Virus record (IMG/VR): IMGVR_UViG_3300024503_000485
Span: 124,001 to 188,000 of that record
Length of the DNA: 64,000 nt
Direction: 5' to 3' (one strand)
The position numbers and the translations under genes are program-made. The notes below the pieces were generated by a model, which saw only the letters and a program-made list of their open reading frames with translations, was not told the DNA's origin and ran no database searches. Position 1 is the stretch's first letter; the number at the start of each line of letters is the position of its first letter. Positions 37,732 to 58,097 of the stretch are shown here, piece by piece.

Positions 37732-37746
37732 TATTGGAAATAAGAC

Positions 37747-39576: not shown

Positions 39577-39596
39577 TGAATAAGGAGCGAAATTAA

Positions 39597-41720: not shown

Positions 41721-41732
41721 AAAAGGGTTCAG

Positions 41733-41739
41733 ATAAATA
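41733..41739 (+). promoter_or_regulatory. Late promoter ATAAATA
   Basis: 23 nt upstream of the ATG at 41763. Confidence 0.65.
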
Positions 41740-41762
41740 ATAATAGTTTATGGAGCAGGGTA

Positions 41763-43598: not shown

Positions 43599-44501
43599 AT
43601 GGCAGGCGTTGGAACACAGATTCTTGCATCAGATTATAATAATATTCGAGACAAGATAATTGAGGTAATGGGTACCGGTGCCGGAACTTACGGGTACGGA
43701 CAAGTAATTGCTAGCACAGCAGTAGTTCAAGAAAAAGTAACCAAAGCTCAGTGGGATTATCTTCGATTTGATATTGTTAACGCTAGATTACATCAAACTG
43801 GCACACTCCCAACAATTAGAGAAATTCAAACAACTGATCCAATACGTTACGATGCTGATCATCCAAATTATCAGTATAATACTATTGCTGAACAAGCAAG
43901 AACTGATAGATTTTCAATTGGAGCAGGACAATTTCATACATTAGCAGCAGGGGATGTTTCTAGATCCTCGGCATGGGCTAATAGCGTGTCGTCAAATGTA
44001 GTTGTTGATTTTGGAACGGTTGACCAGTGTAGGTTCTTTTTTAATTCTGGCGGAAAAATTCGATTATATTCTTCAAGAACTGGCGGATCCTCTACTGCTC
44101 AAAATGCTGCCTGGACTAGCCTACTTAGCGCAGTAGGTTCACGAGATTTTTCAGTAAGTTCGTCCGGAGTGTCTTTTTATCAATTGACAAATAGTTACCA
44201 AACATTCTATACATCTACATCGTCATCACCGTATGCATCAAATAGATATACAATTGATGTAAAGTGTAATGTTGCTGATAATTCTGGCGGAACAACTAAT
44301 CAATTAACATTTAGAATTACTTGGCTTGATTCATATACTGATCCAAGTCCTGGAAATCCTCCTCCACCGGGCGATAGTGTTGACGGAACATTAACATTAA
44401 CTATCGAAGAAATTAAAGCTTCGGGAACCCTGTTACCTTCTGGTTCTTTTACAATCACAAGTCCAACAAGTTATTCAATATCTGCAATTGCAGGCTCGTA
44501 A
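43599..44501 (+). CDS. Ser/Thr-rich putative virion structural protein (paralogue of the next gene)
   Basis: DYNNIRDKI, QWDYLRFD and FFNSGGKIR motifs shared with 44530..45435. Confidence 0.7.
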   Translation: MAGVGTQILASDYNNIRDKIIEVMGTGAGTYGYGQVIASTAVVQEKVTKAQWDYLRFDIVNARLHQTGTLPTIREIQTTDPIRYDADHPNYQYNTIAEQARTDRFSIGAGQFHTLAAGDVSRSSAWANSVSSNVVVDFGTVDQCRFFFNSGGKIRLYSSRTGGSSTAQNAAWTSLLSAVGSRDFSVSSSGVSFYQLTNSYQTFYTSTSSSPYASNRYTIDVKCNVADNSGGTTNQLTFRITWLDSYTDPSPGNPPPPGDSVDGTLTLTIEEIKASGTLLPSGSFTITSPTSYSISAIAGS

Positions 44502-44529
44502 TTGTTTAAATACCTAACGGAGGAATTTA

Positions 44530-45435
44530 ATGGCGGCCTATGATTATATTAGCGTACCGGATTATAACAATATTAGAAATAAAATTTCTGGAGTAATGTC
44601 TACCGGGTCAGCCACACTTGGATACGGGCAGGCCTTACAATCTTCGTTGGTTGCAACTGGCGATGCTGTTACAAAGACACAATGGGATAATTTAAGATTT
44701 GATGTAGTTAATGCAATAGTGCATCAATCAGGTTCAGTTCCAACAATAACTACAATTAACGAAGGCGAATTACTTAGATATGCAGCTGATCAGCCAAATT
44801 ATCAATATAGCACATTAGCATCGTTAGCAGAAACAAATCGTTTTGATTTAGGAACAGGTCAGTATGTTACTGAAGCAGGAACATCAAGATCTAACTCTGT
44901 TTCTTTTAGTGGCGAGGTAGCAAGTACCTGTACAATATCATTTACAAGTGCTGATCAAGCAAGATATTTTTTTAATTCTGGCGGAAAAATAAGATTTACT
45001 TCAGCATTTACTCAAGGTGCTTCTCCTACACAACAAGATAATTCTTGGAACACTACTTTATCTGCAACATCTGCAAGTCCTGCTGTGTTTGGGGGTAATT
45101 CTCCCGCAGTTAATTTTTATACTTTAACCAATTCTTATCAAACATTTTATCAACTTTCATCATCATCTCCATATTCATCTAATAGATGGCAAATAGATGT
45201 ATTATGTAATATTGGTAATAATAATTCAGGCGGCGCAACATCTATAACTTTTAGATCTAGATGGATTGACGGATATACTGATCCCGGATTTCCTCCCCCT
45301 GGAGATGCAGTTAACGGAACAATGTCCTGGACCATAACCCATGTTAGAGCGTCCGGAGCTTTATATCCAAATTTAACACCTCAGAGTTTTAATGCTCCTT
45401 CTCCTGCTTATGCTGCACCTAGCACCATAGCATAA
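44530..45435 (+). CDS. Ser/Thr-rich putative virion structural protein (paralogue of the previous gene)
   Basis: DYNNIRNKI, QWDNLRFD and FFNSGGKIR motifs; SD GGAGG. Confidence 0.7.
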   Translation: MAAYDYISVPDYNNIRNKISGVMSTGSATLGYGQALQSSLVATGDAVTKTQWDNLRFDVVNAIVHQSGSVPTITTINEGELLRYAADQPNYQYSTLASLAETNRFDLGTGQYVTEAGTSRSNSVSFSGEVASTCTISFTSADQARYFFNSGGKIRFTSAFTQGASPTQQDNSWNTTLSATSASPAVFGGNSPAVNFYTLTNSYQTFYQLSSSSPYSSNRWQIDVLCNIGNNNSGGATSITFRSRWIDGYTDPGFPPPGDAVNGTMSWTITHVRASGALYPNLTPQSFNAPSPAYAAPSTIA

Positions 45436-45459
45436 TTTTTCACCCCATCTATACCCCAC

Positions 45460-45466
45460 ATAAATA
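45460..45466 (+). promoter_or_regulatory. Late promoter ATAAATA heading the 45494-58097 operon
   Basis: 27 nt upstream of the ATG at 45494; SD GGGAG follows. Confidence 0.65.
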
Positions 45467-45493
45467 ATATACTCATATTATTAGGGAGTATGT

Positions 45494-45844
45494 ATGGAAT
45501 CTTTATTAACAAAAGCCTTAGAGTTTTCAAACTATAAGCAATCTCTAGCCATTCAACGCAAAGCGTTAAAAGAAAAAGTTGATGCAAAATTAACTTTTGG
45601 ATTCAATGGCGGTATTTTTAAAATTAACAGAGAATTAATTAATTTTGTTCAATTTTTAATTGATCAAGATAGATCTACAGATGTAGTTCTTATCGACGCA
45701 AACGACAATCCTGTTTTAGTTAATGATTTGTCAAAATTCAAAGATGAAATTTTTGACAGATACTTTACAGCGACCAACGAATATTATCAAGAATACGAAG
45801 TGATTAAAAAAGCTCGTTCTGTAGAAGCATTGGTGGATCTATGA
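45494..45844 (+). CDS. Hypothetical protein (possibly a fibre-assembly chaperone)
   Basis: 116 aa with good SD; function inferred only from position. Confidence 0.6.
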   Translation: MESLLTKALEFSNYKQSLAIQRKALKEKVDAKLTFGFNGGIFKINRELINFVQFLIDQDRSTDVVLIDANDNPVLVNDLSKFKDEIFDRYFTATNEYYQEYEVIKKARSVEALVDL

Positions 45845-46701
45845 AAAAAGGCGGCCTAATTTTTGCTCATAATAGCAGAGAAGTTGACTATGCTTTATTG
45901 GCAGTGATTTCTGGTGGCCTTGCAAAAAAGAATCTTGAAATTCCGTTTACTTTAGTAACAGATGATGCTACAATTGAATGGATGAAGACTTCAAATATTT
46001 GGGATAAAGCAAATGACGTTTTTGAAAACATTATTTCTACCCCACGTCCAGAAACTCTGAACACAAGACGTTTAAATGACGGTAACGAATCGAAAACAAT
46101 TCCTTTCATTAATGCCGATAGAGCATCGGTATGGGATCTAACACCATATGATAGAACACTTCTTCTAGATAGCGATTATTTGATTTTTTCTAACGCCCTG
46201 AATAATTATTGGGATATTGATGAAAGTATTTTAATATCAAAATCTATGAATGATATTAGAGGTGATCGAATTGGTTTCTTAGATAAACATGTATCTGAAA
46301 CAGGAGTTCATTTGTTTTGGGCTACCGCTGTCATTTTTACAAAAAACGAGGAAAGCAAAACATTTTTTGAATATGTAAAACATATTCGAAACAACTACGA
46401 ACAATACGGTGACATTTACAGATTTAATCCTCATCAGTATAGAAACGATATTTCTTTCAGCGTTGCAAAACATTTCTTAGAAGGTTTTACAACAGATACT
46501 TCAAATGCTTTACCGTCATTATTAACTACAACTGATAAAGATATGTTAGCCGATGTTAAGGGAAATAAATTATACTTCCTAATAAATGATCCTTTAAATC
46601 AAGAAGCATTTACAGCATGTTCTATTAATAATACCGATGTTCATGTAATGAATAAACAAAGCATTGTTAGAAATAAAGATAAATTGTTGGAGTTAATATG
46701 A
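45841..46701 (+). CDS. GT-A fold nucleotide-diphospho-sugar transferase-like protein
   Basis: TPYDRTLLLDSDY (DxD) and YRNDISFS motifs. Confidence 0.7.
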   Translation: MKKGGLIFAHNSREVDYALLAVISGGLAKKNLEIPFTLVTDDATIEWMKTSNIWDKANDVFENIISTPRPETLNTRRLNDGNESKTIPFINADRASVWDLTPYDRTLLLDSDYLIFSNALNNYWDIDESILISKSMNDIRGDRIGFLDKHVSETGVHLFWATAVIFTKNEESKTFFEYVKHIRNNYEQYGDIYRFNPHQYRNDISFSVAKHFLEGFTTDTSNALPSLLTTTDKDMLADVKGNKLYFLINDPLNQEAFTACSINNTDVHVMNKQSIVRNKDKLLELI

Positions 46702-47537
46702 CATTTGGATATTTAATTGTAGTTGCCAAACACGAAACAATTGACTACACAAAATTAGCCTATTCTTTGGCATTAAGTATTAAAAATACACAGAAGTGGG
46801 GTTATAATAATGTAGCTTTAGTTACAGATGATGTTTCTGCTGTAGAACAATTAAAAAGTCCTTGGGTATTTGATAAAGTAATTCCTTGGAACAAAGAAAA
46901 GGGATGGGACGGTCGATCATGGATGGATCATTTAACACCTTGGGATAACACAATATGTTTAGATGCTGACATGTTGTTTACAAGAGATGTTAGTCATTGG
47001 GCAGAATATTTTATTAATAACTCAGAATTGTATGTAGCAAACAAAGCATTTACATACAGAGGAGAAGTTATTACAGGCGATTTTTATAGAAAAGCATTTG
47101 TAAAAAATAATTTGCCTAATTTATATTCTTTCTATACGTTCTTTAAGAAAGATAGCGAACTAGCAAAAGAATTTTTTACCTTAGCAAGACATATTATAAA
47201 AAATCCTAACGAATTTAAAAATACTTTCTTTCCAGATTTTAAACCTAAAGTAATTGGAACCGATGAAGCATTTGCATTATCATCTAAAATTTTAGATATT
47301 ACTGATCAAATTGCATATGATTTAGATTTTCCTAAAATTGTTCACATGAAGCCAATGATTCAAAATTGGCCATGGCCGTCAGATAGATACACAGATCATG
47401 TAGGATTTTATTTCAATGTAAACAACGAACTTAAGATTGGAAATTATAGACAATATGATGTAGTTCATTATGTTGAAAAAGAATTGATTACAGATGAAAT
47501 TATCAGCATACAGGAAGAGAAATTATGGCAGAAATAA
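46698..47537 (+). CDS. GT-A fold glycosyltransferase-like protein
   Basis: TPWDNTICLDADML (DxD) and GTDEAFAL motifs; paralogous to the previous gene. Confidence 0.7.
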   Translation: MTFGYLIVVAKHETIDYTKLAYSLALSIKNTQKWGYNNVALVTDDVSAVEQLKSPWVFDKVIPWNKEKGWDGRSWMDHLTPWDNTICLDADMLFTRDVSHWAEYFINNSELYVANKAFTYRGEVITGDFYRKAFVKNNLPNLYSFYTFFKKDSELAKEFFTLARHIIKNPNEFKNTFFPDFKPKVIGTDEAFALSSKILDITDQIAYDLDFPKIVHMKPMIQNWPWPSDRYTDHVGFYFNVNNELKIGNYRQYDVVHYVEKELITDEIISIQEEKLWQK

Positions 47538-48121
47538 TAGACTTTGACGAATGGTTAGCAAATTATAAACCGCCAGAAGTAAAATTTTACGCTGCATTTG
47601 ATCCTAATACAGGCGATGTAACAGGAGTGTATCCGTCACACGCTCTAACAGATCAAAAAAATGTTGTAGAAATTGATCAAGAAACAGCACAATTAATTAA
47701 TGAAGGCGCATTAAAATTAAATTCGTGTTTTGTTGATATTAGCTCAGGCAAATTTGAAATTGCAGAAATAAGAAGTCTTATAAAGATAGACGATGTGCTC
47801 CATAGGATTGTTGATAAAAAATGGTCTGATGTAGAAGACCCCGATGTAATTGTTTCCTATGTAGAAGGAACAGACAAATTAGTTTTTGACCTTTCTCCTA
47901 AGTATAGAGAATTAAAAAGAAAGATTCACTGGGACGGAAGTACCGAGCTTTGTTTTTTTATTACAGAATATAACGATCCAAATATTGTTAGATTTATAGT
48001 AAAATTTAGTATCAGTGATTTAACAGAAAAACAAATTTCACTAACCGGTTTACCTTTAGAAGGTAGATTTAGTGTTTACACAAGAAGATTATTCCCCAAA
48101 TACGTGATCGAGACAAAATGA
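47525..48121 (+). CDS. Hypothetical protein
   Basis: 198 aa; overlaps both neighbours. Confidence 0.7.
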   Translation: MAEIIDFDEWLANYKPPEVKFYAAFDPNTGDVTGVYPSHALTDQKNVVEIDQETAQLINEGALKLNSCFVDISSGKFEIAEIRSLIKIDDVLHRIVDKKWSDVEDPDVIVSYVEGTDKLVFDLSPKYRELKRKIHWDGSTELCFFITEYNDPNIVRFIVKFSISDLTEKQISLTGLPLEGRFSVYTRRLFPKYVIETK

Positions 48122-49029
48122 AAGTTATTGAATTTGATGTTGTATTTTTAAGTTATGATGAACCTAATGCAGACTTGCATTATGCGGACCTGTGTAATAA
48201 AGTACCTTGGGCAAAACGTATTCACGGTGTTAAAGGTTCAGACCATGCACATAAAGCCGCAGCAGAAAGTAGTGACACTGATTGGTTTGTTACCGTCGAT
48301 GCTGACAATATTGTAGATCCAAGATTTTTTAATCTCGATTTAAAAATGGATGATCCAAAGATACAGGTCTATGGATGGTGTGGCCGCAACGTTATCAATG
48401 GACTACGATATGGTAATGGTGGTTTAAAAATCTGGAAAAAAGATTTTGTTCTTAACATGAAAACACATGAAAATTCTGATAGCGATAGAGGACAAGTTGA
48501 TTTTTGCTGGGAAGATGGATACAAAAACTTTCCTTTAAGTTTTAGTGATAGCATTATTACAGGAAGTCCATTTCAAGCATGGAGAGCAGGATTCCGTGAA
48601 GGTGTTAAAATGACGTTGCTCGACGGAGTCAAAGTTCCTCCGGCTGAAATACAAGAACGCATTTGGTGGCATAACATTCATAGACTGCGTATGTGGTCTA
48701 CGGTAGGCGCTCACGAAGAAAACGGTCTATATGCTGTATACGGTGCTAGACTAGGAACATGGATGGCTAATTGCACAGACTGGAATTATATAGAAGTTAG
48801 AGATTTTGAAATTCTTAGAGGAATCTGGAATCAATATGGACGTCCCTACGAAGAAGTAAACGGTGAAGGATTAGTTGATGCAACAAAGGACCTAGGTGAA
48901 AAAATTAAAGTTGGTTTAGGTTTGCACTGGCCTTATTTAGATCCTAACCAAAGCAAGTACACACTAGATTTATATAATGAAACTATGAATTTAAACGATA
49001 CTTATTTTAGAATGCCCGAAAATGTATGA
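48118..49029 (+). CDS. GT-A (family 2-like) glycosyltransferase
   Basis: FDVVFLSYDEPNAD, WFVTVDADN (DxD), AWRAGFREGVKM motifs. Confidence 0.75.
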   Translation: MKVIEFDVVFLSYDEPNADLHYADLCNKVPWAKRIHGVKGSDHAHKAAAESSDTDWFVTVDADNIVDPRFFNLDLKMDDPKIQVYGWCGRNVINGLRYGNGGLKIWKKDFVLNMKTHENSDSDRGQVDFCWEDGYKNFPLSFSDSIITGSPFQAWRAGFREGVKMTLLDGVKVPPAEIQERIWWHNIHRLRMWSTVGAHEENGLYAVYGARLGTWMANCTDWNYIEVRDFEILRGIWNQYGRPYEEVNGEGLVDATKDLGEKIKVGLGLHWPYLDPNQSKYTLDLYNETMNLNDTYFRMPENV

Positions 49030-51289
49030 TATTTTTTATGTTTCAAAAAATTCCATTAACGACTATAACTGGAACTCAGTCAAGTCAAAATATCCCACAG
49101 CTAGAAAATTTGAAAACATAAATTCTTTTGATCAATTAAAAAAACAAGCATTTACTAAAATGTTTTGGGTTGTGTGGGACGACCTTACCTTATTAGACAA
49201 TCTTAATTTAAACACATACAGAGCTACCCAGTGGGACGATATGTATGTTCATGTATTTAAAAATAGTGATCATTACGACGGAGTTTGTTTATTTCCTAAG
49301 TCAGTTACAATTTCTCAAAGAGAATTTGATAATCGGTTTTTTACAGATAAAAAAGAAATAGATATTGTTGCTAGTATTCCACTAGGATATGATAAATTTA
49401 ATATTACAACTTACGATGATTATCTAAACGCTGTTGAACAATCAAGTACAGACATGTTTTGGGCAATTTGGCCTGATGTAAATGTCAAAGAAGATTTTAA
49501 ATTTAATTATAAAGTTCCTAAGCATAATTCTAATATTGTTCATATTTTTAAAAATGGAGAATTTTTTGACGGCATTTGCTTATTTCCAAAAAATGTAAAA
49601 GTTTCTAAGAGAGAATTTTATCATAGATTTTTTGCAGAAAAAAAAGAAATAGATATTGTTGCTAGTATTCCAAAACAATACAACATCTATTCTCCTAAAA
49701 CATTTGATGAGTATAAACAAATTACAGACGATATGTTTTGGATTGTGTGGCCTGAGGTAAAAATTATTAACAATGAAATTTTTGATTTATATTTTAGCCA
49801 TCACAATACCTATGACAGAAGAGAAAATCATGTTTTTAAAAATTTGTGTAATTACGACGAATCTTACCTAAGCGGAATTTTGTTATGCAGCAAATTTAAA
49901 CCTTTAACACAAGAAGAGTTTGATAAACAATATCCTACTGATAAAAAAGAATATAATATAATCGCTAGTAAATTTCAATATCCTATATATACAATCACAT
50001 CTTACGAGCAATATTTAGATATATGTAAAACTGAATCTCAAAATATGTTTTGGTGTGTATGGCCAGAAATTAAAATATTAGATGATAAACTATTTGATTT
50101 GTATTTTGATCCAAATAGTGGGGCATTTGATTATGATAGAAAAGAAAATCATGTTTTTAAAAATTTATGTAACGACAAAGAATCTTTTCTAAACGGTGTA
50201 GTATTATTTTCTAAAGAAAAAATCATATCTAAAAAAGAATTTAATAGAAGATTTTTAATTGATAAAAAAGAACATAATTTTGTAGCAAGTCGTTATGCGT
50301 ATCCTGTTTACAATATTGATACTTATGACGATTACAAACAAATTATAGACACCGAATCTCAACCTTTATTCTGGGCAATTTGGCCTGAAATAGAAATTAT
50401 TGATTCTGAAATTTTTAATTTATATTTTGAACCTAATAATGGCGTATATGATTATGATAGAAATATCAATCATGTATTTCAGCATAAATTTAGAAACGAA
50501 TTAACATATAACGGATTGATGTTAATGTCTACATCAACGCCAGTTAGTCCTAAAGAAATTGATTTTAGGTTTTTAATTAATAAAAAACAATATGAACAAG
50601 TTGTTTCTAAGCATAAAGACTATGATATAATATTTGTAAGTTATAACGAACCTAATGCTGAAGAAAATTATAATAAACTAATTAACAAATTTCCAAGAGC
50701 TAAACGAGTACATGGTGTTAAAGGTATTCATCAAGCGCATATAAAGGCAGCTGAACTTGCCACAACAGACATGTTCTGGGTTGTTGATGCCGATGCACAT
50801 ATAATAGATGATTTTAATTTTAATCATCAGGCAACGCGATACGAAAAAGATGTTGTTCATGTGTGGAGAAGTAAAAATCCAATAAATGATTTAATATATG
50901 GTTATGGTGGAGTAAAACTATTACCAAGAAAATTAACATTAGATATGGATGTAAATACAGCCGACATGACAACATCGATTAGTAAAAAATTTAAAGCAAT
51001 GCCGGAAGTCAGTAATATATCTGCATTCAATACAGATCCTTTTAATACTTGGAAATCGGCATTTAGAGAATGTGTAAAACTTTCTAGTAGAACAATTGCT
51101 GGACAAGTTGATGAGGAAACACAAAAGAGATTAGACATATGGTGTTCTGTAGCAAAAGACAAATTTGCTAATGATGCACTTAGCGGTGCAATTGCAGGAC
51201 GTAAGTACGGAGAAGAAAATAAAAACAATCCAGAAGCCCTTGCAAAAATTAATGATTTTGATTGGTTAAAAACACAATATGGAATTTAA
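49022..51289 (+). CDS. Glycosyltransferase-like protein with five degenerate tandem modules and one intact C-terminal GT-A domain
   Basis: Repeated FWxxW(D/P)(D/E) modules; final domain has MFWVVDAD and TWKSAFRECVKL, like 48118..49029. Confidence 0.75.
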   Translation: MYDIFYVSKNSINDYNWNSVKSKYPTARKFENINSFDQLKKQAFTKMFWVVWDDLTLLDNLNLNTYRATQWDDMYVHVFKNSDHYDGVCLFPKSVTISQREFDNRFFTDKKEIDIVASIPLGYDKFNITTYDDYLNAVEQSSTDMFWAIWPDVNVKEDFKFNYKVPKHNSNIVHIFKNGEFFDGICLFPKNVKVSKREFYHRFFAEKKEIDIVASIPKQYNIYSPKTFDEYKQITDDMFWIVWPEVKIINNEIFDLYFSHHNTYDRRENHVFKNLCNYDESYLSGILLCSKFKPLTQEEFDKQYPTDKKEYNIIASKFQYPIYTITSYEQYLDICKTESQNMFWCVWPEIKILDDKLFDLYFDPNSGAFDYDRKENHVFKNLCNDKESFLNGVVLFSKEKIISKKEFNRRFLIDKKEHNFVASRYAYPVYNIDTYDDYKQIIDTESQPLFWAIWPEIEIIDSEIFNLYFEPNNGVYDYDRNINHVFQHKFRNELTYNGLMLMSTSTPVSPKEIDFRFLINKKQYEQVVSKHKDYDIIFVSYNEPNAEENYNKLINKFPRAKRVHGVKGIHQAHIKAAELATTDMFWVVDADAHIIDDFNFNHQATRYEKDVVHVWRSKNPINDLIYGYGGVKLLPRKLTLDMDVNTADMTTSISKKFKAMPEVSNISAFNTDPFNTWKSAFRECVKLSSRTIAGQVDEETQKRLDIWCSVAKDKFANDALSGAIAGRKYGEENKNNPEALAKINDFDWLKTQYGI
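49350..50166 (+). repeat. Intragenic direct repeats: 32 bp (49350-49381 = 49641-49672) and 24 bp (49822-49845 = 50143-50166)
   Basis: Exact matches read from the sequence; periods of 291 and 321 nt are in frame. Confidence 0.85.
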
Positions 51290-52697
51290 TAGAAATATAA
51301 AAGGTAATGAACTTAGAAAGATTGATGGAAAATATCAGTCTCGATATCTATTAGATGCAGAATTTGTTCATAAGGAATTAAACGAAGTAAGTCCAAGTTT
51401 TTGTTTGGCCAAATGGTTTAATGTTAGTATACACATTCCGTCTGGAAGAACACATAGTTGTTATCATCCTAGAAGTCATGCAATTCCATTAGATGAAGTA
51501 AAGATCGATGTTAGTGCATTGCATAATACAAAATATAAAAAATCTCAACGTGCATTGATGTTACAGGGTATACGACCTAAAGAATGCGAATTTTGTTGGC
51601 AAATTGAAGATAGCGGAAACCAACTAAGCGATCGAGCATATCGAAGCAAAGATGTATGGGAACCAGGGTTAATTGATGAAGCATTAGAGCTTGGTTACGA
51701 GGGAAATGCTAAACCAAGATATGTTGAAGTAAATTTTAATCAAGCATGTAATTTTAAATGTAGTTATTGTAGCCCTCATCTTAGCACAGCATGGTATGAT
51801 GAAATTAAAAAAGAAGGCCCGTACCTTTTAACTGACCGTGTGCATAATGATATTCTATGGATTCAAAACGAATCACCAATCGACAATAGTCCTGAAAATC
51901 CTTATGTAAAAGCATTCTGGGAATGGCTTCCAGAAATTTATCCAACCTTACAAACATTCCGCATGACTGGCGGAGAACCGCTTATGGATAAAAATACCTT
52001 TAGGATGTTTGAATATGTAAAAAATAATCCTAAAAGTGATCTTCATTTAAGTATTACAAGTAATTGCTGTCCTCCAAAAGACCAATGGTCAAAATTTATG
52101 TCTAGTTTAAAAGAAATTACAGATGCAGAGGCTGTTGATCATTTTATGTTATTTTGTAGTTTAGATAGTTGGGGTAAGCAAGCAGAATATATACGTAATG
52201 GAATGGATTTTGAAATGTTAAAGGCAAACGTCACTGACTATCTTGCAAATAGTCAGAAACATTCACTTACTTTTATCATAACATTTAATGCTTTGAGTTA
52301 TACTCGTATTGTTGAATATTTGCAGAACATTATTAAATTGAGAAGAAAATTTAGTAAACGTAGACAACTAATTTGGTTTGATATCCCTCCGCTCCATGAT
52401 CCAGATTTTTTAAATCCCAAAGTAATGCCAGAAATGGTAACAGAACTTAAATTGGCATTAAAATATATGTTAGAAAATAAAGAAGGTCGTGGTAATCAGT
52501 TTATGGGATTTAGCGACTTTGAAGTGAGTAAAGTTCGAAGATTAATTGATTGGATTGAATCAGATACAGGATTTGACAAAGATAAAGCTATGAAAAATTT
52601 TTATGAATTTTTCTCAGAACACGATAGAAGACGAAATACAAATTTTTTAAATACATTTCCTGAACTAACAGATTTTTGGAATAGGTGTAAAGAATAA
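51279..52697 (+). CDS. Radical SAM protein with N-terminal Cys-rich auxiliary (twitch/SPASM-like) domain
   Basis: CNFKCSYC; TGGEPL; N-terminal FCLAKW...HSCYH...CEFCW. Confidence 0.9.
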   Translation: MEFNRNIKGNELRKIDGKYQSRYLLDAEFVHKELNEVSPSFCLAKWFNVSIHIPSGRTHSCYHPRSHAIPLDEVKIDVSALHNTKYKKSQRALMLQGIRPKECEFCWQIEDSGNQLSDRAYRSKDVWEPGLIDEALELGYEGNAKPRYVEVNFNQACNFKCSYCSPHLSTAWYDEIKKEGPYLLTDRVHNDILWIQNESPIDNSPENPYVKAFWEWLPEIYPTLQTFRMTGGEPLMDKNTFRMFEYVKNNPKSDLHLSITSNCCPPKDQWSKFMSSLKEITDAEAVDHFMLFCSLDSWGKQAEYIRNGMDFEMLKANVTDYLANSQKHSLTFIITFNALSYTRIVEYLQNIIKLRRKFSKRRQLIWFDIPPLHDPDFLNPKVMPEMVTELKLALKYMLENKEGRGNQFMGFSDFEVSKVRRLIDWIESDTGFDKDKAMKNFYEFFSEHDRRRNTNFLNTFPELTDFWNRCKE

Positions 52698-54064
52698 TGG
52701 ATGATAGAGTAAATTATATTAAAGGTGTTAGAGATCGTTTAAACAAAATAGGTCCAGGTTTTTGTGCAATGAAATGGTTGCATCAAACTTTGTATCTTCA
52801 CACCGGTGATAACCATAGTTGTTACCATCCTCGTCCTCATCACATTCCATTAGATGAAATTAAAATAGATGCAAGTGCTTTACACAATACTAAATGGAAA
52901 AAACAACAACGTAAAAAAATGTTAGAAGGTGAAAGACCAGAAGAATGTTATTATTGTTGGAATATTGAAGACTTGCCGGGAGAGCATATAAGTGATCGAA
53001 TGATTCATAGTTCTAGCGATTTTTCAGAACCTTACATAGAAAAATTAGCAGAATTACCATGGGACGCTCCGGTAAACCCACGCTATCTAGAAGTAAGTTT
53101 TGGTAACGGATGCAACTATCGCTGTGGTTATTGTTGCCCACAGGCTAGTACTATGTGGATGGAAGAGATCAAGAAACACGGTAATTATGATTTAACTTAT
53201 AATCAATATGGTATTGAGTTTTTAAAAAATGGAACATATTATGGGCCTAAAGATGAAAACCCTTACATCGAAGCATTCTGGAAGTGGTGGCCAAGTTTAC
53301 GTAATGATTTACATACTTTACGTATTACAGGCGGTGAACCATTAATGAATCCTGGTGCTATGCAGTTTTTTGATTTACTAGAAGATGAGCCAGCTCCCCA
53401 TTTAGAGATTACACTTAATAGTAATCTTGGAGTAACTTTTGATCGAGTTGATCGATTAATAGCTCGAGTAAAAAGTTTAATAGAACAGAAAAAAATTAGA
53501 AAGTTTAGTTTCTTTACTAGCATTGATAGCTGGGGAGAACAAGCAGAATATATGCGTACAGGATTAAAATGTGATCACTGGGAACGCAATATGAAAGAAG
53601 TAATTAAAGCCGGTGCAACGGTAAATCTAATGTGTACTTATAACGTATTATGTGTAACTAATTTTCAAAAGTTATTACACAAAGTTATCGAATGGAGAAA
53701 AGAATACGGCAAGGAAGCTGTATCTTTTGATACACCATATTTAAAAGAACCGCCACACTGGATGATTAATATTTTGCCTGAAGAATTTATTAAACATCAA
53801 GAAGACACTTTAAAATTTATTGAAGATAATATGGATTGGTTTACAGGCGTCGAATACGAAAAGTTTAAACGTGTAACAGATTACATGAAAGAAAATCCAG
53901 TTAGCGATTTAAAAATTCTTCAAGGAAGAAGAGATTTTTATAGTTTCTTTTCTGAAAATGATAGAAGATTAGGAACTAATTTATTAGAGGTTTTTCCAGA
54001 GTATAGTAACTTTTATAACTTATGTAAAAACATTTACGAAAATTATGATAACAGAAACAAATAA
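52697..54064 (+). CDS. Radical SAM protein, close paralogue of the previous gene
   Basis: CNYRCGYC; TGGEPL; N-terminal FCAMKW...HSCYH...CYYCW. Confidence 0.9.
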   Translation: MDDRVNYIKGVRDRLNKIGPGFCAMKWLHQTLYLHTGDNHSCYHPRPHHIPLDEIKIDASALHNTKWKKQQRKKMLEGERPEECYYCWNIEDLPGEHISDRMIHSSSDFSEPYIEKLAELPWDAPVNPRYLEVSFGNGCNYRCGYCCPQASTMWMEEIKKHGNYDLTYNQYGIEFLKNGTYYGPKDENPYIEAFWKWWPSLRNDLHTLRITGGEPLMNPGAMQFFDLLEDEPAPHLEITLNSNLGVTFDRVDRLIARVKSLIEQKKIRKFSFFTSIDSWGEQAEYMRTGLKCDHWERNMKEVIKAGATVNLMCTYNVLCVTNFQKLLHKVIEWRKEYGKEAVSFDTPYLKEPPHWMINILPEEFIKHQEDTLKFIEDNMDWFTGVEYEKFKRVTDYMKENPVSDLKILQGRRDFYSFFSENDRRLGTNLLEVFPEYSNFYNLCKNIYENYDNRNK

Positions 54065-55268
54065 AAATTCTTGGTGTGTTAATGCGTTCCATGGAATGAG
54101 CGCAAATAACAACGGAAGTTCTAAAATGTGTTGTATGATTATTGAAGAATACAACAGAATGAAAGAATTACAACCAATTTATTTTGTAGACAAAATGTCT
54201 ATCGAACAAAATTTTAATAATCCTGTAGCAATACAAATTCGAAAAGATTTAGAAAACGGAATAAGAAATTATGCCTGCAAAAATTGTTGGGAAGAAGAAA
54301 ATGCTGGACGTAAAAGTAAGCGTCTTCGAGATAATGAAATATATTTTAGATCGATAGAAAGGGGAGAAAAACCATTTACCGGTCTTGCTAAGTTTGAATT
54401 AAATCTAGGAAATAATTGTAACATAAAGTGTAGAACCTGTGCTCCTCAGATTAGTTCAACATGGATGAAAGAAGATTACGATCTGCATCATTCAAAAATT
54501 TCTTATAAAGAATATGCAGAAATGATGAGAGTGTTTCATCAGAGCTACGACGACGAAAGTGTTTTCTGGGAAGATTTAAAAAATAATTTAGTCAATATTA
54601 GACAATTTGATTTTTATGGCGGCGAACCGTTTTTAAGTAAAAAGATGTGGGAAATTCTAAGTATATGTGTTGACAAAGGATATGCTAAAGATATTGAATT
54701 GCATTATAATACTAACGGTACAACTTGGCCAGAAGATAAAATTTCTATGTTTAAACATTTTAAAGGTGTTAATTTATCTTTTAGTATTGACGGTATAGAA
54801 GAACAATTTGAATATATGAGATTTCCAGCAAAATGGAATGAAGTATTAGAAAATATGAATAAGGCAAAAGAGCTTGCTAATAGTTTAAAAACTCTTAAAA
54901 TTAGTTGGTGCATTACTTTAAGTACACTGAACATATATGACTTACCTAAAACAATAAATTTTTATTACGATCATTTTTCTAGTTTTGGTTTTTATCTAAA
55001 TTTAGTTCACGGACCCCGACATTATAATATTTCAACTCTCCCAACAGATATTAAAGAAAAAATTATTCAACATATTAATGATGTTGTGCCTAAGACGCAG
55101 AATCAAGCATGGATGTATCTAGATGGCATTTTAAATTTTATAAAAAACGGACACTACGAGCCTTCAAGTTTTACTTCTCTAAAGGAAGTAACAAAAAAAC
55201 ACGATCAATATCGAGGACAAGAATTTAATAAAGTTTTTCCTGACTATTCAAAAATTATAGGTATGTAA
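54045..55268 (+). CDS. Radical SAM protein with N-terminal auxiliary Cys cluster
   Basis: CNIKCRTC; YGGEPF; N-terminal WCV...MCC...CKNCW. Confidence 0.9.
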   Translation: MITETNKNSWCVNAFHGMSANNNGSSKMCCMIIEEYNRMKELQPIYFVDKMSIEQNFNNPVAIQIRKDLENGIRNYACKNCWEEENAGRKSKRLRDNEIYFRSIERGEKPFTGLAKFELNLGNNCNIKCRTCAPQISSTWMKEDYDLHHSKISYKEYAEMMRVFHQSYDDESVFWEDLKNNLVNIRQFDFYGGEPFLSKKMWEILSICVDKGYAKDIELHYNTNGTTWPEDKISMFKHFKGVNLSFSIDGIEEQFEYMRFPAKWNEVLENMNKAKELANSLKTLKISWCITLSTLNIYDLPKTINFYYDHFSSFGFYLNLVHGPRHYNISTLPTDIKEKIIQHINDVVPKTQNQAWMYLDGILNFIKNGHYEPSSFTSLKEVTKKHDQYRGQEFNKVFPDYSKIIGM

Positions 55269-55270
55269 AA

Positions 55271-56536
55271 ATGAGTTTTTGGAATTTTAATGAATTAATA
55301 CAAGTACATATTGAACTTACAAATCATTGTAATGCTGCTTGTCCTATGTGCGTAAGATTTTATAATTCTTCAGAGTTAATTAGACCAGATTTAAATTTAA
55401 GTCAAATTTCTTTAGAAGATTTTAAAAAATGGTTCCCTCAAGAAGTATTAGATAGAGTTAAACTTTGGTTATTCTGTGGCGTTCATGGAGATCCGTGTAT
55501 GGCTAAAGATTTTTATGAAATATGCGAGTACATCATTAATAATAGTCCTGGGGTCATAGCTGTGCATACAAATGGCGGCATGAGAAATCCTGAATGGTGG
55601 GCAAAATTAGGTAATCTTTTTGCAAAAGGAAAAGCATCAAATCAATATAGGCTTACTTTTTCCATTGACGGGTTAGAAGATACAAATCACATTTATCGAA
55701 GAAACGTTAAATGGGATAAACTTATAGCAAATGCACAAGCATTTATTGATGCGGGTGGGAGAGCTCTTTGGGACTTTTTAATTTTTAAACACAACGAGCA
55801 TCAACTAGATACTGCAAAAAAATTATCTGAGGATATGGGATTTACTGAATTTGTTCCTAAAAAAGCATTAGGCGTTGATAATGGAACAGAATTAATATAT
55901 ATGGTAGCTCTTAATAAAGAAGGACAATTAGATTACTATATTGAAGCTCCTACAAATCCCAAAAATAGAAATTTAGAAAATCCAACAGGAATCCAACCTT
56001 TAAAATTTTATCCTTTTTCAAAAGATGATTATAATAAGATGAAAGAAAATTCAGAATTTAAAAATTCTTATTATAAAAGAACAGAAGAAATTGTTGATAT
56101 AATAGCAAGTTCTAAATATGACGAACACGACTCGTGTAATATTAAGTGTAAATCGCATATTGATGATGGGTATAAACGTGGAAAAGAAATTTTTGTCGAT
56201 AGTGCTGGTAACGTTATGCCTTGTTGTTATATTGGAACACATTTAAATGGAATTTATTCTGATCCTCCAAGTATGCAACTTGTTCGTAATTTAAATAATT
56301 ATGGACCAGAAAAACTTAATTTAAATAACCATTCTTTAGAAGAAATTTTATCAGCGGAGCATTTAGATAGATTATATGCAGACACATGGGATAAAACAAC
56401 AAAAGAAGGAAAACTTGTTTATTGTTCTAAAACCTGCGGAACATTTTCATCTATAGATAAAATTTTTACACATGAAATTGTTTTAAAAAATAGAAAAAAA
56501 AGATATTTAGAATCACAAAAACCAAATGAAAGTTGA
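55271..56536 (+). CDS. Radical SAM protein with C-terminal SPASM/twitch-like domain
   Basis: CNAACPMC; GDPC; C-terminal CKS...GNVMPCC...CSKTC. Confidence 0.9.
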   Translation: MSFWNFNELIQVHIELTNHCNAACPMCVRFYNSSELIRPDLNLSQISLEDFKKWFPQEVLDRVKLWLFCGVHGDPCMAKDFYEICEYIINNSPGVIAVHTNGGMRNPEWWAKLGNLFAKGKASNQYRLTFSIDGLEDTNHIYRRNVKWDKLIANAQAFIDAGGRALWDFLIFKHNEHQLDTAKKLSEDMGFTEFVPKKALGVDNGTELIYMVALNKEGQLDYYIEAPTNPKNRNLENPTGIQPLKFYPFSKDDYNKMKENSEFKNSYYKRTEEIVDIIASSKYDEHDSCNIKCKSHIDDGYKRGKEIFVDSAGNVMPCCYIGTHLNGIYSDPPSMQLVRNLNNYGPEKLNLNNHSLEEILSAEHLDRLYADTWDKTTKEGKLVYCSKTCGTFSSIDKIFTHEIVLKNRKKRYLESQKPNES

Positions 56537-58097
56537 TGTATTATACTCCGGACAATTAAGATATGCTGAGGCATGTTCTCGACAAAAAGAATTTTTTAAA
56601 AATACTGAGTGTCGAAATGTTTTTAGTTTATTAGACATCGTACAAGATTCTCATGCAAAAATGGCATTACGATCTTCCTACATGTTTGATGCTGACAAAG
56701 ATTTTCGATATGCTTTAAATTATATTACAGAACAATTGAATCCAGAGGTCACTGCTGTATATTCAAAATATCAAATTTCTGAATGGTTTCAAAATGCATA
56801 TGGGGAAATAGATACCTATAAAGTCTATTATATTCAACACTTATATACATTCATCGAAGGATTAAAACAAACTAAAAATGATGTTGTTGTTTCAATAACA
56901 ACAGATTTAATATTAGAAGGAGATTTAAATTCTTTTCTTATTGGAGTAGATTTAGAAACTCCTCAGGTTTATTGTCATTATAAAAATTTATTAATTCCGC
57001 ATGTTATTATTTTAAACAATAAGGCAAGAGAAATAATTCTTAATAAAAGCAGTGAGTTTTTATCTACATTTTTTACAACAAATCCTCCAGAAACTTGGTT
57101 CAAGGCTGAAACACTTTGGGAAAAACTTTTTGAATATTGTGGAATAAAAATTAAAATATTAAAGACAATACATCAATGTAAGGTAAGACCCACAATGGTT
57201 ATTACAGATTTAAAAAAATCTATTAATCAATTGAGTATTATGTTTGAAAATTGGAGAAAGTATAAAGATACCGCAAGTAAACAATCTAAATTTAAATTTG
57301 ATAAAAAATTAATATCAAGGATTGTTGCTTATGGATGTAGTTATACAGCAGGAGATGAATTTTTAGATACTTTATATCGAGCCGATGCGGAAGAAATTAA
57401 AAAACGAAACATTAGAGAATGGTTTGATCTTAAAGTTAATTTTGATAAAAATTTAATTGCAACCATTAATGAAAAACAAAGAAATATGGCTTGGCCTGCA
57501 ATCTTAGCAAATAGATTATCGATGTTAATTGATAATAGAGCTAAAGCAGGAAATTCATTAGCAAATATAGTTTGGCAAATTGAAAAAGATTTTGCCAACG
57601 GAGATATTACTGAAAAAGATTTAATAATTGTTGGATTAACATCATACGAAAGAAATATATATTTTTCACATAAAGAACCAGTTTCGGTTCTGATGCATAT
57701 GAGAGAAAATTTTCCAAAACAATTTCAAAAGTATCAAGGACCAATTGCGGATTTTAATAATTCTATGTTTATGTATTATTTTTATTACTTGTGTCTTTCA
57801 CGACTAATACAATTATCATCAAACCATTTAAAAGGAAGATTGTTAATTGTTCCGTGTATTAACGACGACAATTATAAAAATTTTGATCCTGTGTTAGAAA
57901 AATACTTTCAAACAGATATTTTAAATTTTAGAGATGAATGTTTAAACAGCGAGTATTTTATTACTGATAAAAATCTTTATGATTTTGTTGAACTGCAAGA
58001 GGATGATATTCATGCTGGTGGCCATCCAAAACAAATCGTGCATGAAAGATTTGTTGACCACTTACTAGAGATTTTTCCAACTAAAGAAATTTCTTAG
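56526..58097 (+). CDS. Two-domain protein: putative glycosyltransferase-like N-terminus plus SGNH/GDSL-like hydrolase/acyltransferase C-terminus
   Basis: N-terminal YSGQLR motif; C-terminal IVAYGCSYTAG (block I, GCS for GDS), AGNS, and terminal GHP. Confidence 0.6.
   Translation: MKVDVLYSGQLRYAEACSRQKEFFKNTECRNVFSLLDIVQDSHAKMALRSSYMFDADKDFRYALNYITEQLNPEVTAVYSKYQISEWFQNAYGEIDTYKVYYIQHLYTFIEGLKQTKNDVVVSITTDLILEGDLNSFLIGVDLETPQVYCHYKNLLIPHVIILNNKAREIILNKSSEFLSTFFTTNPPETWFKAETLWEKLFEYCGIKIKILKTIHQCKVRPTMVITDLKKSINQLSIMFENWRKYKDTASKQSKFKFDKKLISRIVAYGCSYTAGDEFLDTLYRADAEEIKKRNIREWFDLKVNFDKNLIATINEKQRNMAWPAILANRLSMLIDNRAKAGNSLANIVWQIEKDFANGDITEKDLIIVGLTSYERNIYFSHKEPVSVLMHMRENFPKQFQKYQGPIADFNNSMFMYYFYYLCLSRLIQLSSNHLKGRLLIVPCINDDNYKNFDPVLEKYFQTDILNFRDECLNSEYFITDKNLYDFVELQEDDIHAGGHPKQIVHERFVDHLLEIFPTKEIS

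What the first reader, a model, noticed from the sequence alone, without database searches (positions are those of the whole stretch)
45460..58097. Eleven-gene late operon of glycosyltransferases, four radical SAM enzymes and an SGNH protein right after the tail fibres: candidate virion-modification pathway
The genes from 45494 to 58097 all overlap or nearly abut and follow a single late-type promoter (ATAAATA, 45460). They include four GT-A-like proteins, four radical SAM proteins with auxiliary Fe-S domains and a GT-like/SGNH fusion. Late timing and position beside Ser/Thr-rich fibre genes argue against DNA modification, which must act during replication; queE here has a sigma70 promoter instead. 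Radical SAM twitch/SPASM enzymes are known to oxidise or epimerise sugars (BtrN, NeoN) and to modify peptides, and SGNH proteins add or remove sugar O-acetyl groups. A phage-encoded pathway building an unusual glycan on virion proteins (or the host surface) is a plausible, largely uncharacterised system.
Basis: inference. Interest (0 to 1): 0.8.

Follow-up and report, generated by a model that had tools for sequence, protein, structure and literature searches.

The report
Late fibre-linked sugar-tailoring operon in jumbo phage
A giant freshwater phage carries, right after its tail-fibre genes and under a late promoter, a conserved eleven-gene set of sugar-transferring and radical-chemistry enzymes that probably builds an unusual sugar decoration, most likely on the virus particle, though the target is unproven.

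Summary
Eleven overlapping or abutting + strand genes (45494-58097) follow an ATAAATA motif. That motif is four-fold depleted in the window and occurs only upstream of genes, and a gp55-like late sigma factor is encoded at 11206-12054. River metatranscriptome contigs begin about 35-45 nt after the motif.

The genes are two GT8/glycogenin-like proteins, two GT2/A64R-like GT-A proteins, three N-terminal-twitch radical SAM paralogues (NF033640), one radical SAM/SPASM-like protein and one protein with an SGNH-like C-terminal half. All are soluble and acidic.

The order fibre, A300/B301-like protein, g1, g2, g3, (g4), g5 recurs in more than 60 longer fetched loci of uncultured phages, in a distant marine relative and in cultured Ralstonia phage RsoM2USA. 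The number of radical SAM genes varies from 1 to 7. Relatives add NDP-sugar enzymes or fuse the radical SAM to a GT2 or a carbamoyltransferase.

A glycan-building and glycan-tailoring pathway is therefore well supported. The virion-protein target is only the best guess (about 0.4). Published DNA-glycosylating phage GT-A enzymes have the same fold matches and also sit near structural genes, so DNA hypermodification remains a live rival. No member of the radical SAM family has been characterised.

The parts
45460..45466 (+). ATAAATA, core of a T4-like late promoter for the cassette
   Evidence: The motif is depleted in the window (10 copies against 38.8 expected) and every copy lies upstream of a start codon, structural genes included. 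A gp55-like sigma factor is encoded in the window. RNA-library contigs begin at 45499-45504 in 3 of 4 runs.
45494..45844 (+). g1, 116 aa, small acidic protein of unknown function that always heads the cassette
   Evidence: No Pfam, PHROG or NCBIfam hit. Orthologues share 26-74% identity in about 60 loci, in RsoM2USA_354 and in marine locus L167. It has no cysteine and no core resembling a RiPP precursor.
45841..46701 (+). g2, 286 aa, GT8-like GT-A glycosyltransferase with an invariant DxD
   Evidence: Atlas neighbours carry Glyco_transf_8 or Mannosyl_trans3. The profile hits glycogenin weakly at E 0.07. D110 and D112 are invariant.
46698..47537 (+). g3, 279 aa, GT8/glycogenin-like GT-A glycosyltransferase
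   Evidence: The profile hits glycogenin-1 and glycogenin-2 at E 4e-5 over residues 5-105, which include the DxD region.
47525..48121 (+). g4, 198 aa, unknown protein, the least conserved member of the GT module
   Evidence: No family hit. It shares 21-61% identity with orthologues and is undetected in several distant loci.
48118..49029 (+). g5, 303 aa, GT-A (GT2-like) domain plus a helical C-terminal domain. It is the most conserved GT, at up to 91% identity
   Evidence: The AlphaFold model has pLDDT 89. Foldseek against the PDB gives PBCV-1 A64R at E 4e-5, then RmlT and SunS, with low TM scores. D61xD63 is invariant. It is 41% identical to RsoM2USA_350.
49022..51289 (+). g6, 755 aa: five degenerate GT-like repeats of about 100 aa without DxD, then a g5-like GT domain (533-755) with a VDADA motif
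   Evidence: Repeats were found by motif scan, and the C-terminus is 36% identical to g5 at E 7e-30. The Pfam Glycos_transf_2 hit is weak, 17.2 bits against a cutoff of 23.3. Orthologues range from 441 to 1084 aa, so repeat number probably varies.
51279..52697 (+). g7, 472 aa, radical SAM with an N-terminal twitch domain
   Evidence: NF033640 at 325.6 bits against a cutoff of 170. It has CNFKCSYC and four N-terminal cysteines. Its clade is sister to g8.
52697..54064 (+). g8, 455 aa, N-terminal-twitch radical SAM. It is the core radical SAM of the system, at 72-93% identity
   Evidence: NF033640 at 308.6 bits. In the tree, the only radical SAM of the one-radical-SAM relatives falls on the g8 side, and the RsoM2USA copies fall in the g7/g8 superclade.
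54045..55268 (+). g9, 407 aa, N-terminal-twitch radical SAM from a separate clade
   Evidence: NF033640 at 307.1 bits. C11, C29, C30, C78, C81, C125, C129 and C132 are invariant. 783 homologues were found.
55271..56536 (+). g10, 421 aa, radical SAM with a C-terminal SPASM-like cysteine domain and no N-terminal twitch
   Evidence: Pfam Radical_SAM at 34.2 bits. SPASM at 19 bits, below the 21.5 cutoff. C20, C24, C27, C293, C318, C319, C385 and C389 are invariant.
56526..58097 (+). g11, 523 aa: divergent N-terminal domain plus an SGNH-like C-terminal domain. It is a variable accessory gene
   Evidence: GCSxTAG, NR..G and H..HP blocks are conserved. Atlas neighbours carry Lipase_GDSL or DUF6071. 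Relatives of about 590 aa carry DUF6492 at the N-terminus. No PDB or Pfam hit for g11 itself. Full-length orthologues occur only in the closest relatives.
43599..45435 (+). A300 and B301, two paralogous proteins of about 300 aa that always lie immediately upstream of g1. They are candidate acceptors or distal fibre components
   Evidence: They are conserved before g1 in all loci long enough to show it, and in RsoM2USA_355 and L167. The model (pLDDT 90) shows a helical N-terminus and a beta-sandwich. It has no significant PDB match and only uncharacterised phage relatives in BFVD. S+T content is 25%.
35644..43589 (+). Four tail-fibre genes (F1-F4) with a shared N-terminal anchor, upstream of the cassette
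   Evidence: PHROG hits to tail fibre, tail collar and virion structural families.
11206..12054 (-). gp55-like sigma factor for late transcription
   Evidence: phrog_12791 at E 1.8e-82 and phrog_234 at E 6.5e-23.

Best explanation
The cassette is a late-expressed, cytoplasmic pathway that builds and tailors a glycan and is functionally tied to the tail-fibre module.

Proposed mechanism:
- Four GT-A glycosyltransferases assemble a short oligosaccharide from host NDP-sugars. Two are GT8/glycogenin-like (g2, g3) and two are GT2/A64R-like (g5 and the C-terminus of g6).
- The acceptor is made at the same time. The most likely candidates are the adjacent A300/B301 proteins or other exposed virion fibre proteins.
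- The radical SAM enzymes then alter sugar residues by hydrogen-atom abstraction, for example epimerisation, oxidation, deoxygenation or C-C chemistry. The g8 type is the core enzyme. g7, g9 and g10 are lineage-specific additions.
- g11 adds or removes an O-acyl group.
- g1 and g4 are accessory or adaptor proteins.

Shown here: the gene order, the enzyme classes, the late-type promoter, transcription in nature, conservation, linkage to fibre genes, and association of the radical SAM family with sugar enzymes.

Inferred: that sugars are the radical SAM substrates, the order of steps, and above all that the acceptor is a virion protein.
For: - Operon and promoter. In 3 of 4 river metatranscriptomes, RNA-library contigs start at 45499-45504 while upstream contigs stop before 45426, and depth rises 2-3 fold there.
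- GT-A folds.
- Radical SAM classes.
- Sugar link of the N-terminal-twitch family: a fusion to a GT2/GT7C domain (P0147) and a fusion to a NodU/CmcH-type carbamoyltransferase (P0211). Neighbours include UDPG/GDP-mannose dehydrogenase, GT2, a CTP-transferase/cupin protein and a sugar C-methyltransferase.
- Fibre linkage in four architectures: the window clade with more than 60 loci; cultured RsoM2USA ORFs 355-348; marine locus L167; and L002-type phages, where the four radical SAM genes are followed by DUF6492 proteins and a fibre-like structural protein.
- Cytoplasmic location: none of the 11 proteins has a transmembrane segment, and all are acidic.
- Contrast with a DNA-modification gene: queE sits in the opposite-strand block behind a perfect sigma-70 promoter.
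- Variable content: the number of radical SAM genes (1-7) and the length of g6 (441-1084 aa, presumably from repeat number) vary among otherwise syntenic relatives. This pattern is expected for a surface glycan under diversifying selection.
Against: - No acceptor is identified. A300/B301 have no informative structural match.
- No virion glycoprotein has been reported for any relative. The RsoM2USA proteomics covered only abundant gel bands.
- The fold evidence does not favour protein over DNA. Published DNA-glycosylating phage GT-A enzymes also match A64R best and also sit near structural genes.
- The chemistry of the radical SAM enzymes is unknown. PDB matches are generic, and SPASM/twitch enzymes often act on peptides.
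- A late promoter does not exclude action on DNA before packaging.
- The RNA data are assembler contigs from metatranscriptome libraries, which can contain DNA.
Confidence: 0.4

Rival explanations
1. DNA hypermodification. The GT-A enzymes glycosylate a modified base in phage DNA after replication, such as a hydroxymethylpyrimidine or a 7-deazaguanine derivative. The radical SAM and SGNH enzymes then tailor the DNA-bound glycan before packaging.
For: - Phage GT-A enzymes, including GT8-like ones that add second and third sugars, glycosylate 5hmC in DNA after replication. Their best PDB match is PBCV-1 A64R, the same top hit as g5. Their clusters occur near structural genes (bioRxiv 10.1101/2023.12.21.572611).
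- The phage has queE and a dCMP deaminase in the same window.
- L002-type relatives have a PTPS/QueD-like gene and DNA ligase near the radical SAM module.
Against: - No C5-methyltransferase, TET/5mYOX or thymidylate-synthase-like hydroxymethylase was found among window genes or in the annotated flanks of L001 and L002.
- The cassette uses the late motif shared with baseplate and fibre genes, whereas queE has a sigma-70 promoter.
- All cassette proteins are acidic, pI 4.8-6.9.
- Adjacency to fibre-like genes persists through genome rearrangements.
Confidence: 0.2
2. Host envelope remodelling. The enzymes alter LPS, O-antigen or capsule precursors on the cytoplasmic face of the membrane. The purpose would be to block superinfection or to stop progeny from re-adsorbing to lysing cells, as proposed for pelagimyophage host-recognition clusters.
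For: - GT8 is typical of LPS synthesis.
- The pelagimyophage paper reports fibres, GT8 genes and radical SAM cassettes together and proposes modification of the host O-chain (PMC7029224).
- Relatives encode NDP-sugar enzymes.
- One related locus has an ABC-2 exporter pair.
Against: - The window cassette has no membrane protein, flippase, polymerase or ligase.
- Late expression leaves little time for export and surface display.
- The cassette is highly conserved (g5 and g8 up to about 90% identity) across phages whose fibres differ, whereas host O-antigens vary.
Confidence: 0.15
3. Protein or peptide maturation of the RiPP type. The SPASM/twitch radical SAM enzymes install crosslinks or epimerise residues in fibre proteins or in the small proteins g1 or g4. 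The glycosyltransferases act as glycocin-like peptide glycosyltransferases.
For: - Most characterised SPASM/twitch enzymes modify peptides. g9 and g10 give weak NCBIfam hits to peptide maturases.
- g5 has fold matches to the SunS and ThuS S-glycosyltransferases.
- A related locus holds PqqD beside a SPASM enzyme.
- YydG is among the weak PDB profile hits.
Against: - The window holds no PqqD/RRE domain and no protease or exporter.
- g1 has no cysteine and no conserved core-like segment.
- The radical SAM family is fused to, or sits beside, sugar enzymes rather than peptide-processing genes.
Confidence: 0.1
4. Synthesis of a soluble small molecule, such as a modified sugar nucleotide, a nucleoside or an aminoglycoside-like compound, used during late infection.
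For: - The weak nearest solved relatives include enzymes that act on nucleotides or on sugar-nucleosides: MoaA, BlsE and viperin.
- All proteins are soluble.
- A cyanophage paper interpreted similar genes as antibiotic synthesis genes (PMC12801897).
Against: - Four transferases without any scaffold-forming or export gene are hard to reconcile with a small-molecule product.
- The conserved position next to fibre genes would be unexplained.
Confidence: 0.08

Closest known systems
Mycobacteriophage virion glycosylation (Freeman et al. 2023, cited in PMC12619734; named from that citation and my own knowledge)
   Same: Phage-encoded GT-A glycosyltransferases lie next to structural genes, are expressed late, and act in the cytoplasm on virion proteins.
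   Different: In that system, one to a few GTs modify the C-termini of the capsid and tail-tube proteins. It has no radical SAM, no SGNH protein and no fibre linkage, and the hosts are Actinobacteria. Here the glycan itself has not been demonstrated.
Chlorovirus PBCV-1 A64R and giant-virus capsid or fibril glycosylation
   Same: A virus-encoded cytoplasmic GT-A decorates virion proteins. A64R is the best PDB fold match of g5.
   Different: The match covers only about 130-190 residues with TM 0.24-0.38. Those are eukaryotic viruses, and no radical SAM tailoring is known in them. The same fold match is reported for DNA-modifying phage GTs.
Phage 5hmC glycan hypermodification clusters (bioRxiv 10.1101/2023.12.21.572611)
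   Same: Several consecutive GT-A enzymes, GT8-like ones included, build mono- to trisaccharides. The clusters are sometimes near structural genes and act after replication.
   Different: Those clusters are defined by an adjacent C5-methyltransferase plus 5mYOX, or by a ThyS-like hydroxymethylase. None was seen here. They contain no radical SAM genes. The promoter here is of the late structural type.
Host-recognition clusters of pelagimyophages and cyanomyophages (PMC7029224)
   Same: Aquatic T4-superfamily myophages with tail fibres, GT8 genes and radical SAM cassettes in one variable region. Marine locus L167 shows direct homology to g1, g2, g3, g5, g7 and g8.
   Different: That paper only described the cluster and proposed modification of the host O-antigen. 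It defined neither the operon and promoter structure nor the radical SAM family.
Twitch/SPASM radical SAM enzymes acting on carbohydrates (BtrN, NeoN, HygY; from my own knowledge)
   Same: A radical SAM core plus an auxiliary Fe-S cluster domain, with plausible action on sugar C-H bonds.
   Different: Here the twitch domain is N-terminal (NF033640). No sequence relationship beyond the generic radical SAM core was detected, and no member of the family is characterised.

Membership tests
Radical SAM superfamily | CxxxCxxC motif binding the SAM-cleaving [4Fe-4S] cluster, plus the GGEP region | tested here: met
   CNFKCSYC, CNYRCGYC, CNIKCRTC and CNAACPMC are present. Pfam PF04055 scores are 27.1, 31.7, 41 and 34.2 bits against a cutoff of 29.5, so g7 is just below it. 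The cysteines are invariant in the alignments.
NF033640 N_Twi_rSAM (radical SAM with an N-terminal twitch domain) | Full-length match above the curated cutoff of 170 bits, with four N-terminal cysteines | tested here: met
   g7 scores 325.6, g8 308.6 and g9 307.1 bits. C23, C42, C84 and C87 (g8 numbering) are invariant. g10 scores 49.5 bits and is not a member.
SPASM domain (PF13186), tested for g10 | C-terminal cysteine-rich domain binding auxiliary clusters, scoring above the gathering cutoff | tested here: inconclusive
   The score is 19.0 bits against a cutoff of 21.5. Five invariant C-terminal cysteines (C293, C318, C319, C385, C389) fit a twitch or partial SPASM domain.
Glycosyltransferase family 8 (glycogenin/LgtC type), tested for g2 and g3 | GT-A fold with a DxD motif and sequence membership in PF01501 | tested here: inconclusive
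   No Pfam hit. The g3 profile hits glycogenin at E 4e-5 over the N-terminal 100 residues, and the g2 profile at E 0.07. The DxD motif is conserved. Atlas neighbours carry PF01501.
Glycosyltransferase family 2 / GT-A fold, tested for g5 and the C-terminus of g6 | GT-A Rossmann-like fold with DxD, plus PF00535 membership | tested here: inconclusive
   The fold criterion is met: Foldseek probability is 1.0 to A64R, RmlT and SunS, but TM is at most 0.38. D61xD63 is invariant. PF00535 matches only g6, at 17.2 bits against a cutoff of 23.3.
SGNH/GDSL hydrolase, tested for the C-terminus of g11 | Block I GDS(x) serine nucleophile, block II Gly, block III Asn, block V DxxH | tested here: inconclusive
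   S272 is invariant within GCSxTAG, N337 and Gly are conserved, and H496 and H500 are invariant. Block III is atypical (VGxTS) and the block V Asp is not conserved. No Pfam or PDB hit. Atlas neighbours carry Lipase_GDSL or DUF6071.
T4-type late transcription unit | gp55-type sigma factor, a TATAAATA-like promoter upstream of virion genes, and late timing | tested here: inconclusive
   The sigma factor is present. The ATAAATA motif is depleted and confined to positions upstream of genes. RNA-library contigs start just downstream of it. Timing cannot be tested with these tools.
Phage virion glycosylation system | A glycan covalently attached to a virion protein that depends on the phage GTs | not testable with these tools
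   This needs glycoproteomics. Only the gene position beside fibre genes was tested, and that criterion is met.
Phage DNA glycan-hypermodification cluster | GTs clustered with a C5-methyltransferase plus 5mYOX/TET, or with a ThyS-like hydroxymethylase | tested here: not met
   No such family appears among the window genes tested or in the precomputed Pfam annotation of the L001 and L002 flanks. The rest of the 219-kb genome was not examined, so a distant partner gene is not excluded.

The most novel reading that the evidence does not exclude
Large aquatic and soil myophages decorate their distal fibre proteins with an oligosaccharide. A previously uncharacterised family of N-terminal-twitch radical SAM enzymes then rewrites that protein-bound glycan. 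The number of such enzymes (1-7) sets a phage-specific glycan code that affects adsorption, or evasion of host or grazer recognition. This would be the first radical-SAM-tailored virion glycan and would define a new class of carbohydrate-modifying radical SAM enzymes.
Probability: 0.3. Interest if true: 0.8.

Novelty: new variant of a known kind. Interest (0 to 1): 0.62.

Why it matters
Phage virion glycosylation has been demonstrated only in mycobacteriophages, to my knowledge. Glycan chemistry in phages is otherwise known mainly from DNA. This cassette is abundant: more than 600 IMG/VR stretches matched g5 alone, and 783 homologues of g9 were found. It is strongly conserved and transcribed in rivers.

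It contains a large radical SAM family with no characterised member (468 clusters at E below 1e-30 among 50%-identity representatives). Finding its substrate would assign a function to that family. It would also explain the unexplained GT and radical SAM content of the host-recognition regions of marine myophages, and show whether fibre glycans influence host range.

A cultured carrier, Ralstonia phage RsoM2USA, makes the question directly testable.

Tried and rejected
- Near-identical DNA search of the cassette against GenBank phages found no match.
- Pfam, PHROG and NCBIfam gave nothing for g1, g2, g3, g4, g5 and g11.
- A single-sequence PDB search with g5 gave nothing. Profile PDB searches for A300/B301 and g11 gave nothing useful.
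- The PDB profile search for the radical SAM family returned only generic core matches, so no chemistry could be transferred.
- I considered an intron in g9 because the tblastn match in the source contig was 464 nt too long. I rejected it: the extra length is spill-over into the paralogue g10, and the locus is 100% collinear with the window.
- I considered g1 as a RiPP precursor and rejected it. It has no cysteine and no conserved core, and its conservation is helical and spread over the whole length.
- I tested whether the 279-aa protein upstream of g7 in L002 is a g5-like GT. hhalign gave no similarity.
- I tested direct similarity between the N-terminus of g11 and a DUF6492 protein. BLASTP found none. 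Only the longer relatives score for DUF6492.
- I looked for collagen-like repeats in the fibres, as a possible hydroxylation and glycosylation target. There are none.
- I tried to link the cassette to 7-deazaguanine genes through the distribution of QueE in cultured phages. The result was not informative.
- The 'moraphage' paper reports four core GT orthogroups in a lineage of aquatic jumbo phages (PMC12619734). I could not establish whether that lineage is this one.

Full report
**What the window is.** The window is part of IMG/VR contig IMGVR_UViG_3300024503_000485 (219 kb). Locus L004 from that contig is 100% identical to window 44045-64000. The phage is a jumbo myovirus. Its baseplate wedge protein is 33-37% identical to those of Agrobacterium phage Atu_ph07, Salicola phage SCTP-2 and the Rak2-like E. 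coli phages. A + strand structural block runs from about 12.1 kb to 45.4 kb. It holds baseplate hub and wedge genes, a 4561-aa protein and four tail-fibre genes. No close DNA relative exists among GenBank phages.

Nine junctions overlap by 1-20 nt and one has a 2-nt gap.
- The 58-nt gap before the first gene holds ATAAATA at 45460-45466.
- That heptamer occurs 10 times in the window against 38.8 +/- 6.4 expected.
- Every copy lies about 5-45 nt (mostly 20-35 nt) upstream of a start codon. The genes served include a T4-type baseplate gene, the wedge gene, the gene after the giant protein, fibre F4 and g1.
- The exact T4 octamer TATAAATA occurs only once, so the element is T4-like rather than identical.
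- A gp55-type late sigma factor is encoded at 11206-12054 on the - strand (phrog_12791, E 1.8e-82).

**Transcription in nature.** River metatranscriptome libraries hold the region. In three of the four runs laid on it, the contigs covering the cassette begin at 45499, 45504 and 45502. The upstream contigs stop at 45425, 45042 and 45270, and word depth rises two- to three-fold at that point. This fits a transcript start at the proposed promoter. These are assembler contigs, and DNA carry-over cannot be excluded.

**What the genes encode.**
- g7, g8 and g9 match NCBIfam NF033640, the radical SAM family with an N-terminal twitch domain. They score 307-326 bits against a cutoff of 170.
- g10 is a different radical SAM. 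It has a weak SPASM hit and five invariant C-terminal cysteines. All four have CxxxCxxC.
- g2 and g3 are GT8-like. The g3 profile hits glycogenin at E 4e-5, the g2 profile hits it weakly, and both keep a DxD motif. Language-model neighbours carry Glyco_transf_8.
- g5 was modelled at pLDDT 89. It is a GT-A domain followed by a helical domain. Its best solved matches are the PBCV-1 capsid glycosyltransferase A64R (E 4e-5), then RmlT and SunS, all with low TM scores.
- g6 consists of five degenerate GT-like repeats that lack DxD, followed by a g5-like domain that is 36% identical to g5.
- The C-terminal half of g11 keeps SGNH-like blocks and has GDSL or DUF6071 neighbours. It gives no Pfam or PDB hit. 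Its N-terminal half only aligns distantly with DUF6492 domains of longer relatives.
- g1 and g4 remain unknown.
- None of the eleven proteins has a transmembrane segment, and all are acidic.

**Conservation and modularity.** A scan with g9 and a scan with g5 each returned 80 viral loci.
- In every locus long enough to show it, the order is fibres, one or two A300/B301-like genes, g1, g2, g3, (g4), g5, g6.
- g5 and g8 are the most conserved genes, up to about 90% identical. This is similar to replication genes in the same loci and much higher than the fibres.
- The radical SAM complement varies. It is four in the window. Many syntenic relatives have a single g8-type gene (45% identical). L089 has two. 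Others have five, and in L116 and L127 the genes are on the opposite strand.
- In a maximum-likelihood tree, g7 and g8 are sister clades. The lone radical SAM of the minimal loci falls on the g8 side, and the RsoM2USA copies fall in the g7/g8 superclade. g9 is a separate clade. The g8 type is therefore the core enzyme and the others are additions.
- g6 ranges from 441 to 1084 aa among orthologues.

**Relatives outside the clade.**
- *Cultured Ralstonia phage RsoM2USA.* It has the same arrangement: ORF355 (fibre anchor plus a B301-like domain), 354 (g1), 353 (g2), 352 (g3), 351 (g4), 350 (g5), 349 (N-terminal-twitch radical SAM) and 348 (g6 C-terminal domain).
- *Marine contig L167.* It reads giant protein, g222, fibre, A300-like, g1, g2, g3, x, g5. 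These are followed by a nucleotidyltransferase/cupin protein, seven radical SAM genes, a SnoaL-like protein, a UDP-glucose/GDP-mannose dehydrogenase and a sugar C-methyltransferase.
- *L002-type phages.* Orthologues of g7-g10 lie away from g1-g6, next to DNA ligase. They are nevertheless followed by DUF6492 proteins and a fibre-like virion protein.
- *Fusions of the radical SAM family.* Among the family's 50%-identity representatives, 468 score better than E 1e-30. One is fused to a GT2/GT7C domain and one to a NodU/CmcH carbamoyltransferase. The closest members examined all come from contigs of at most 250 kb, consistent with large phages.

Together these contexts make a carbohydrate substrate the best-supported reading. 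They also tie both modules to fibre genes.

**What is not settled.** The acceptor is unknown.
- A300 was modelled at pLDDT 90 as a helical N-terminus plus a beta-sandwich. It has no significant PDB match and only uncharacterised phage relatives.
A preprint on phage DNA glycosylation shows post-replicative building of mono- to trisaccharides on 5hmC by GT-A enzymes, GT8-like ones included. Their best PDB match is also A64R, and their clusters can lie among structural genes.
- Against that rival: no methyltransferase, 5mYOX or ThyS-like gene was seen in the window or in the annotated flanks of relatives. The promoter is of the late type, the proteins are acidic, and the fibre adjacency persists.
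- Host-envelope modification was proposed for the similar regions of pelagimyophages (PMC7029224). It is disfavoured by the absence of any membrane or export component and by the late timing.
- A peptide-maturation role for the SPASM/twitch enzymes cannot be excluded.

**Verdict.** It is a widespread, modular, late-expressed, fibre-linked GT plus radical SAM system with a cultured representative. My estimates:
- about 0.75 that it builds and tailors a glycan;
- about 0.4 that the glycan ends up on virion (fibre) proteins;
- about 0.2 for DNA as the target;
- about 0.15 for host envelope precursors;
- the remainder for peptide or small-molecule roles.

It is a new variant of known kinds of viral glycosylation, and it contains an enzymatically uncharacterised radical SAM family.

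Noticed in passing
window 11206-12054 (-): A gp55-like sigma factor for late transcription (phrog_12791, E 1.8e-82). It diverges from the start of the structural block, whose first gene (12129) has an ATAAATA motif 26 nt upstream.
   Followed up: partly
window 2922, 2944, 6691, 12103, 17843, 34962, 41733, 45460, 59541, 60293: ATAAATA is four-fold depleted (10 copies against 38.8 expected) and every copy is upstream of a gene. Three copies serve - strand genes of unknown function (5147-6664, 59265-59534, 59978-60262), which would then also be late genes.
   Followed up: partly
window 45463-45482: An inverted repeat, AATAATAT-ACTC-ATATTATT, overlaps the promoter motif and lies just before the ribosome-binding site of g1. 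It could form a hairpin in the 5' leader or act as an operator.
   Followed up: no
window 21277-34962 (+): A single ORF of 4561 aa in the structural block. Relatives have ORFs of 4946 and 3765 aa at the same position (L002, L167).
   Followed up: no
window 62504-63367 (-) and 63520-63906 (-): queE has a perfect 12/12 sigma-70 promoter whose -10 box ends only 5 nt before the annotated ATG. The mRNA may therefore be leaderless, or the true start may lie further downstream. A dCMP deaminase gene sits just upstream. The phage probably has 7-deazaguanine in its DNA.
   Followed up: partly
window 7838-11174 (-): A 2OG-Fe(II) oxygenase (PF13640) lies directly next to an SbcCD-like pair (AAA_23/SMC and Metallophos).
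   Followed up: no
window 49022-51289; orthologues in L073, L053, L052 and others: g6 orthologues range from 441 to 1084 aa, apparently through gain and loss of the degenerate GT-like repeat of about 100 aa.
   Followed up: partly
L086 (Logan SRR22387760 contig, 82 kb): A locus with nine radical SAM genes. It includes g7-, g8- and g10-like genes, a B12-binding radical SAM and a radical SAM-carbamoyltransferase fusion. Beside them are PqqD, an amidohydrolase, a GT1, an ABC-2 exporter pair and a Peptidase_S74 gene.
   Followed up: no
P0121 (1203 aa, NCBI, 30-kb contig): A single protein with three consecutive N-terminal-twitch radical SAM units, resembling a fusion of the g7-g8-g9 type.
   Followed up: no
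L002 16548-19525: In the 345-kb relative, a PTPS/QueD-like gene, UvdE, an Fe superoxide dismutase and an IscA-like Fe-S assembly gene lie between the radical SAM module and the giant structural gene. The last two could support Fe-S enzymes during infection.
   Followed up: no
L087 (Vibrio phage K566, OZ196521.1, 160-168 kb): This cultured KVP40-like phage has a cluster with at least four distant twitch-type radical SAM genes that are not next to fibre genes. Three of them are annotated as radical SAM in the record.
   Followed up: no
L001 (NCBI GCA_013565695.1, contig JACCDT011047613.1, 272 kb): A phage contig syntenic with the window sits inside a very large, highly fragmented assembly in GenBank, presumably as a contaminant or an associated phage.
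   Followed up: no
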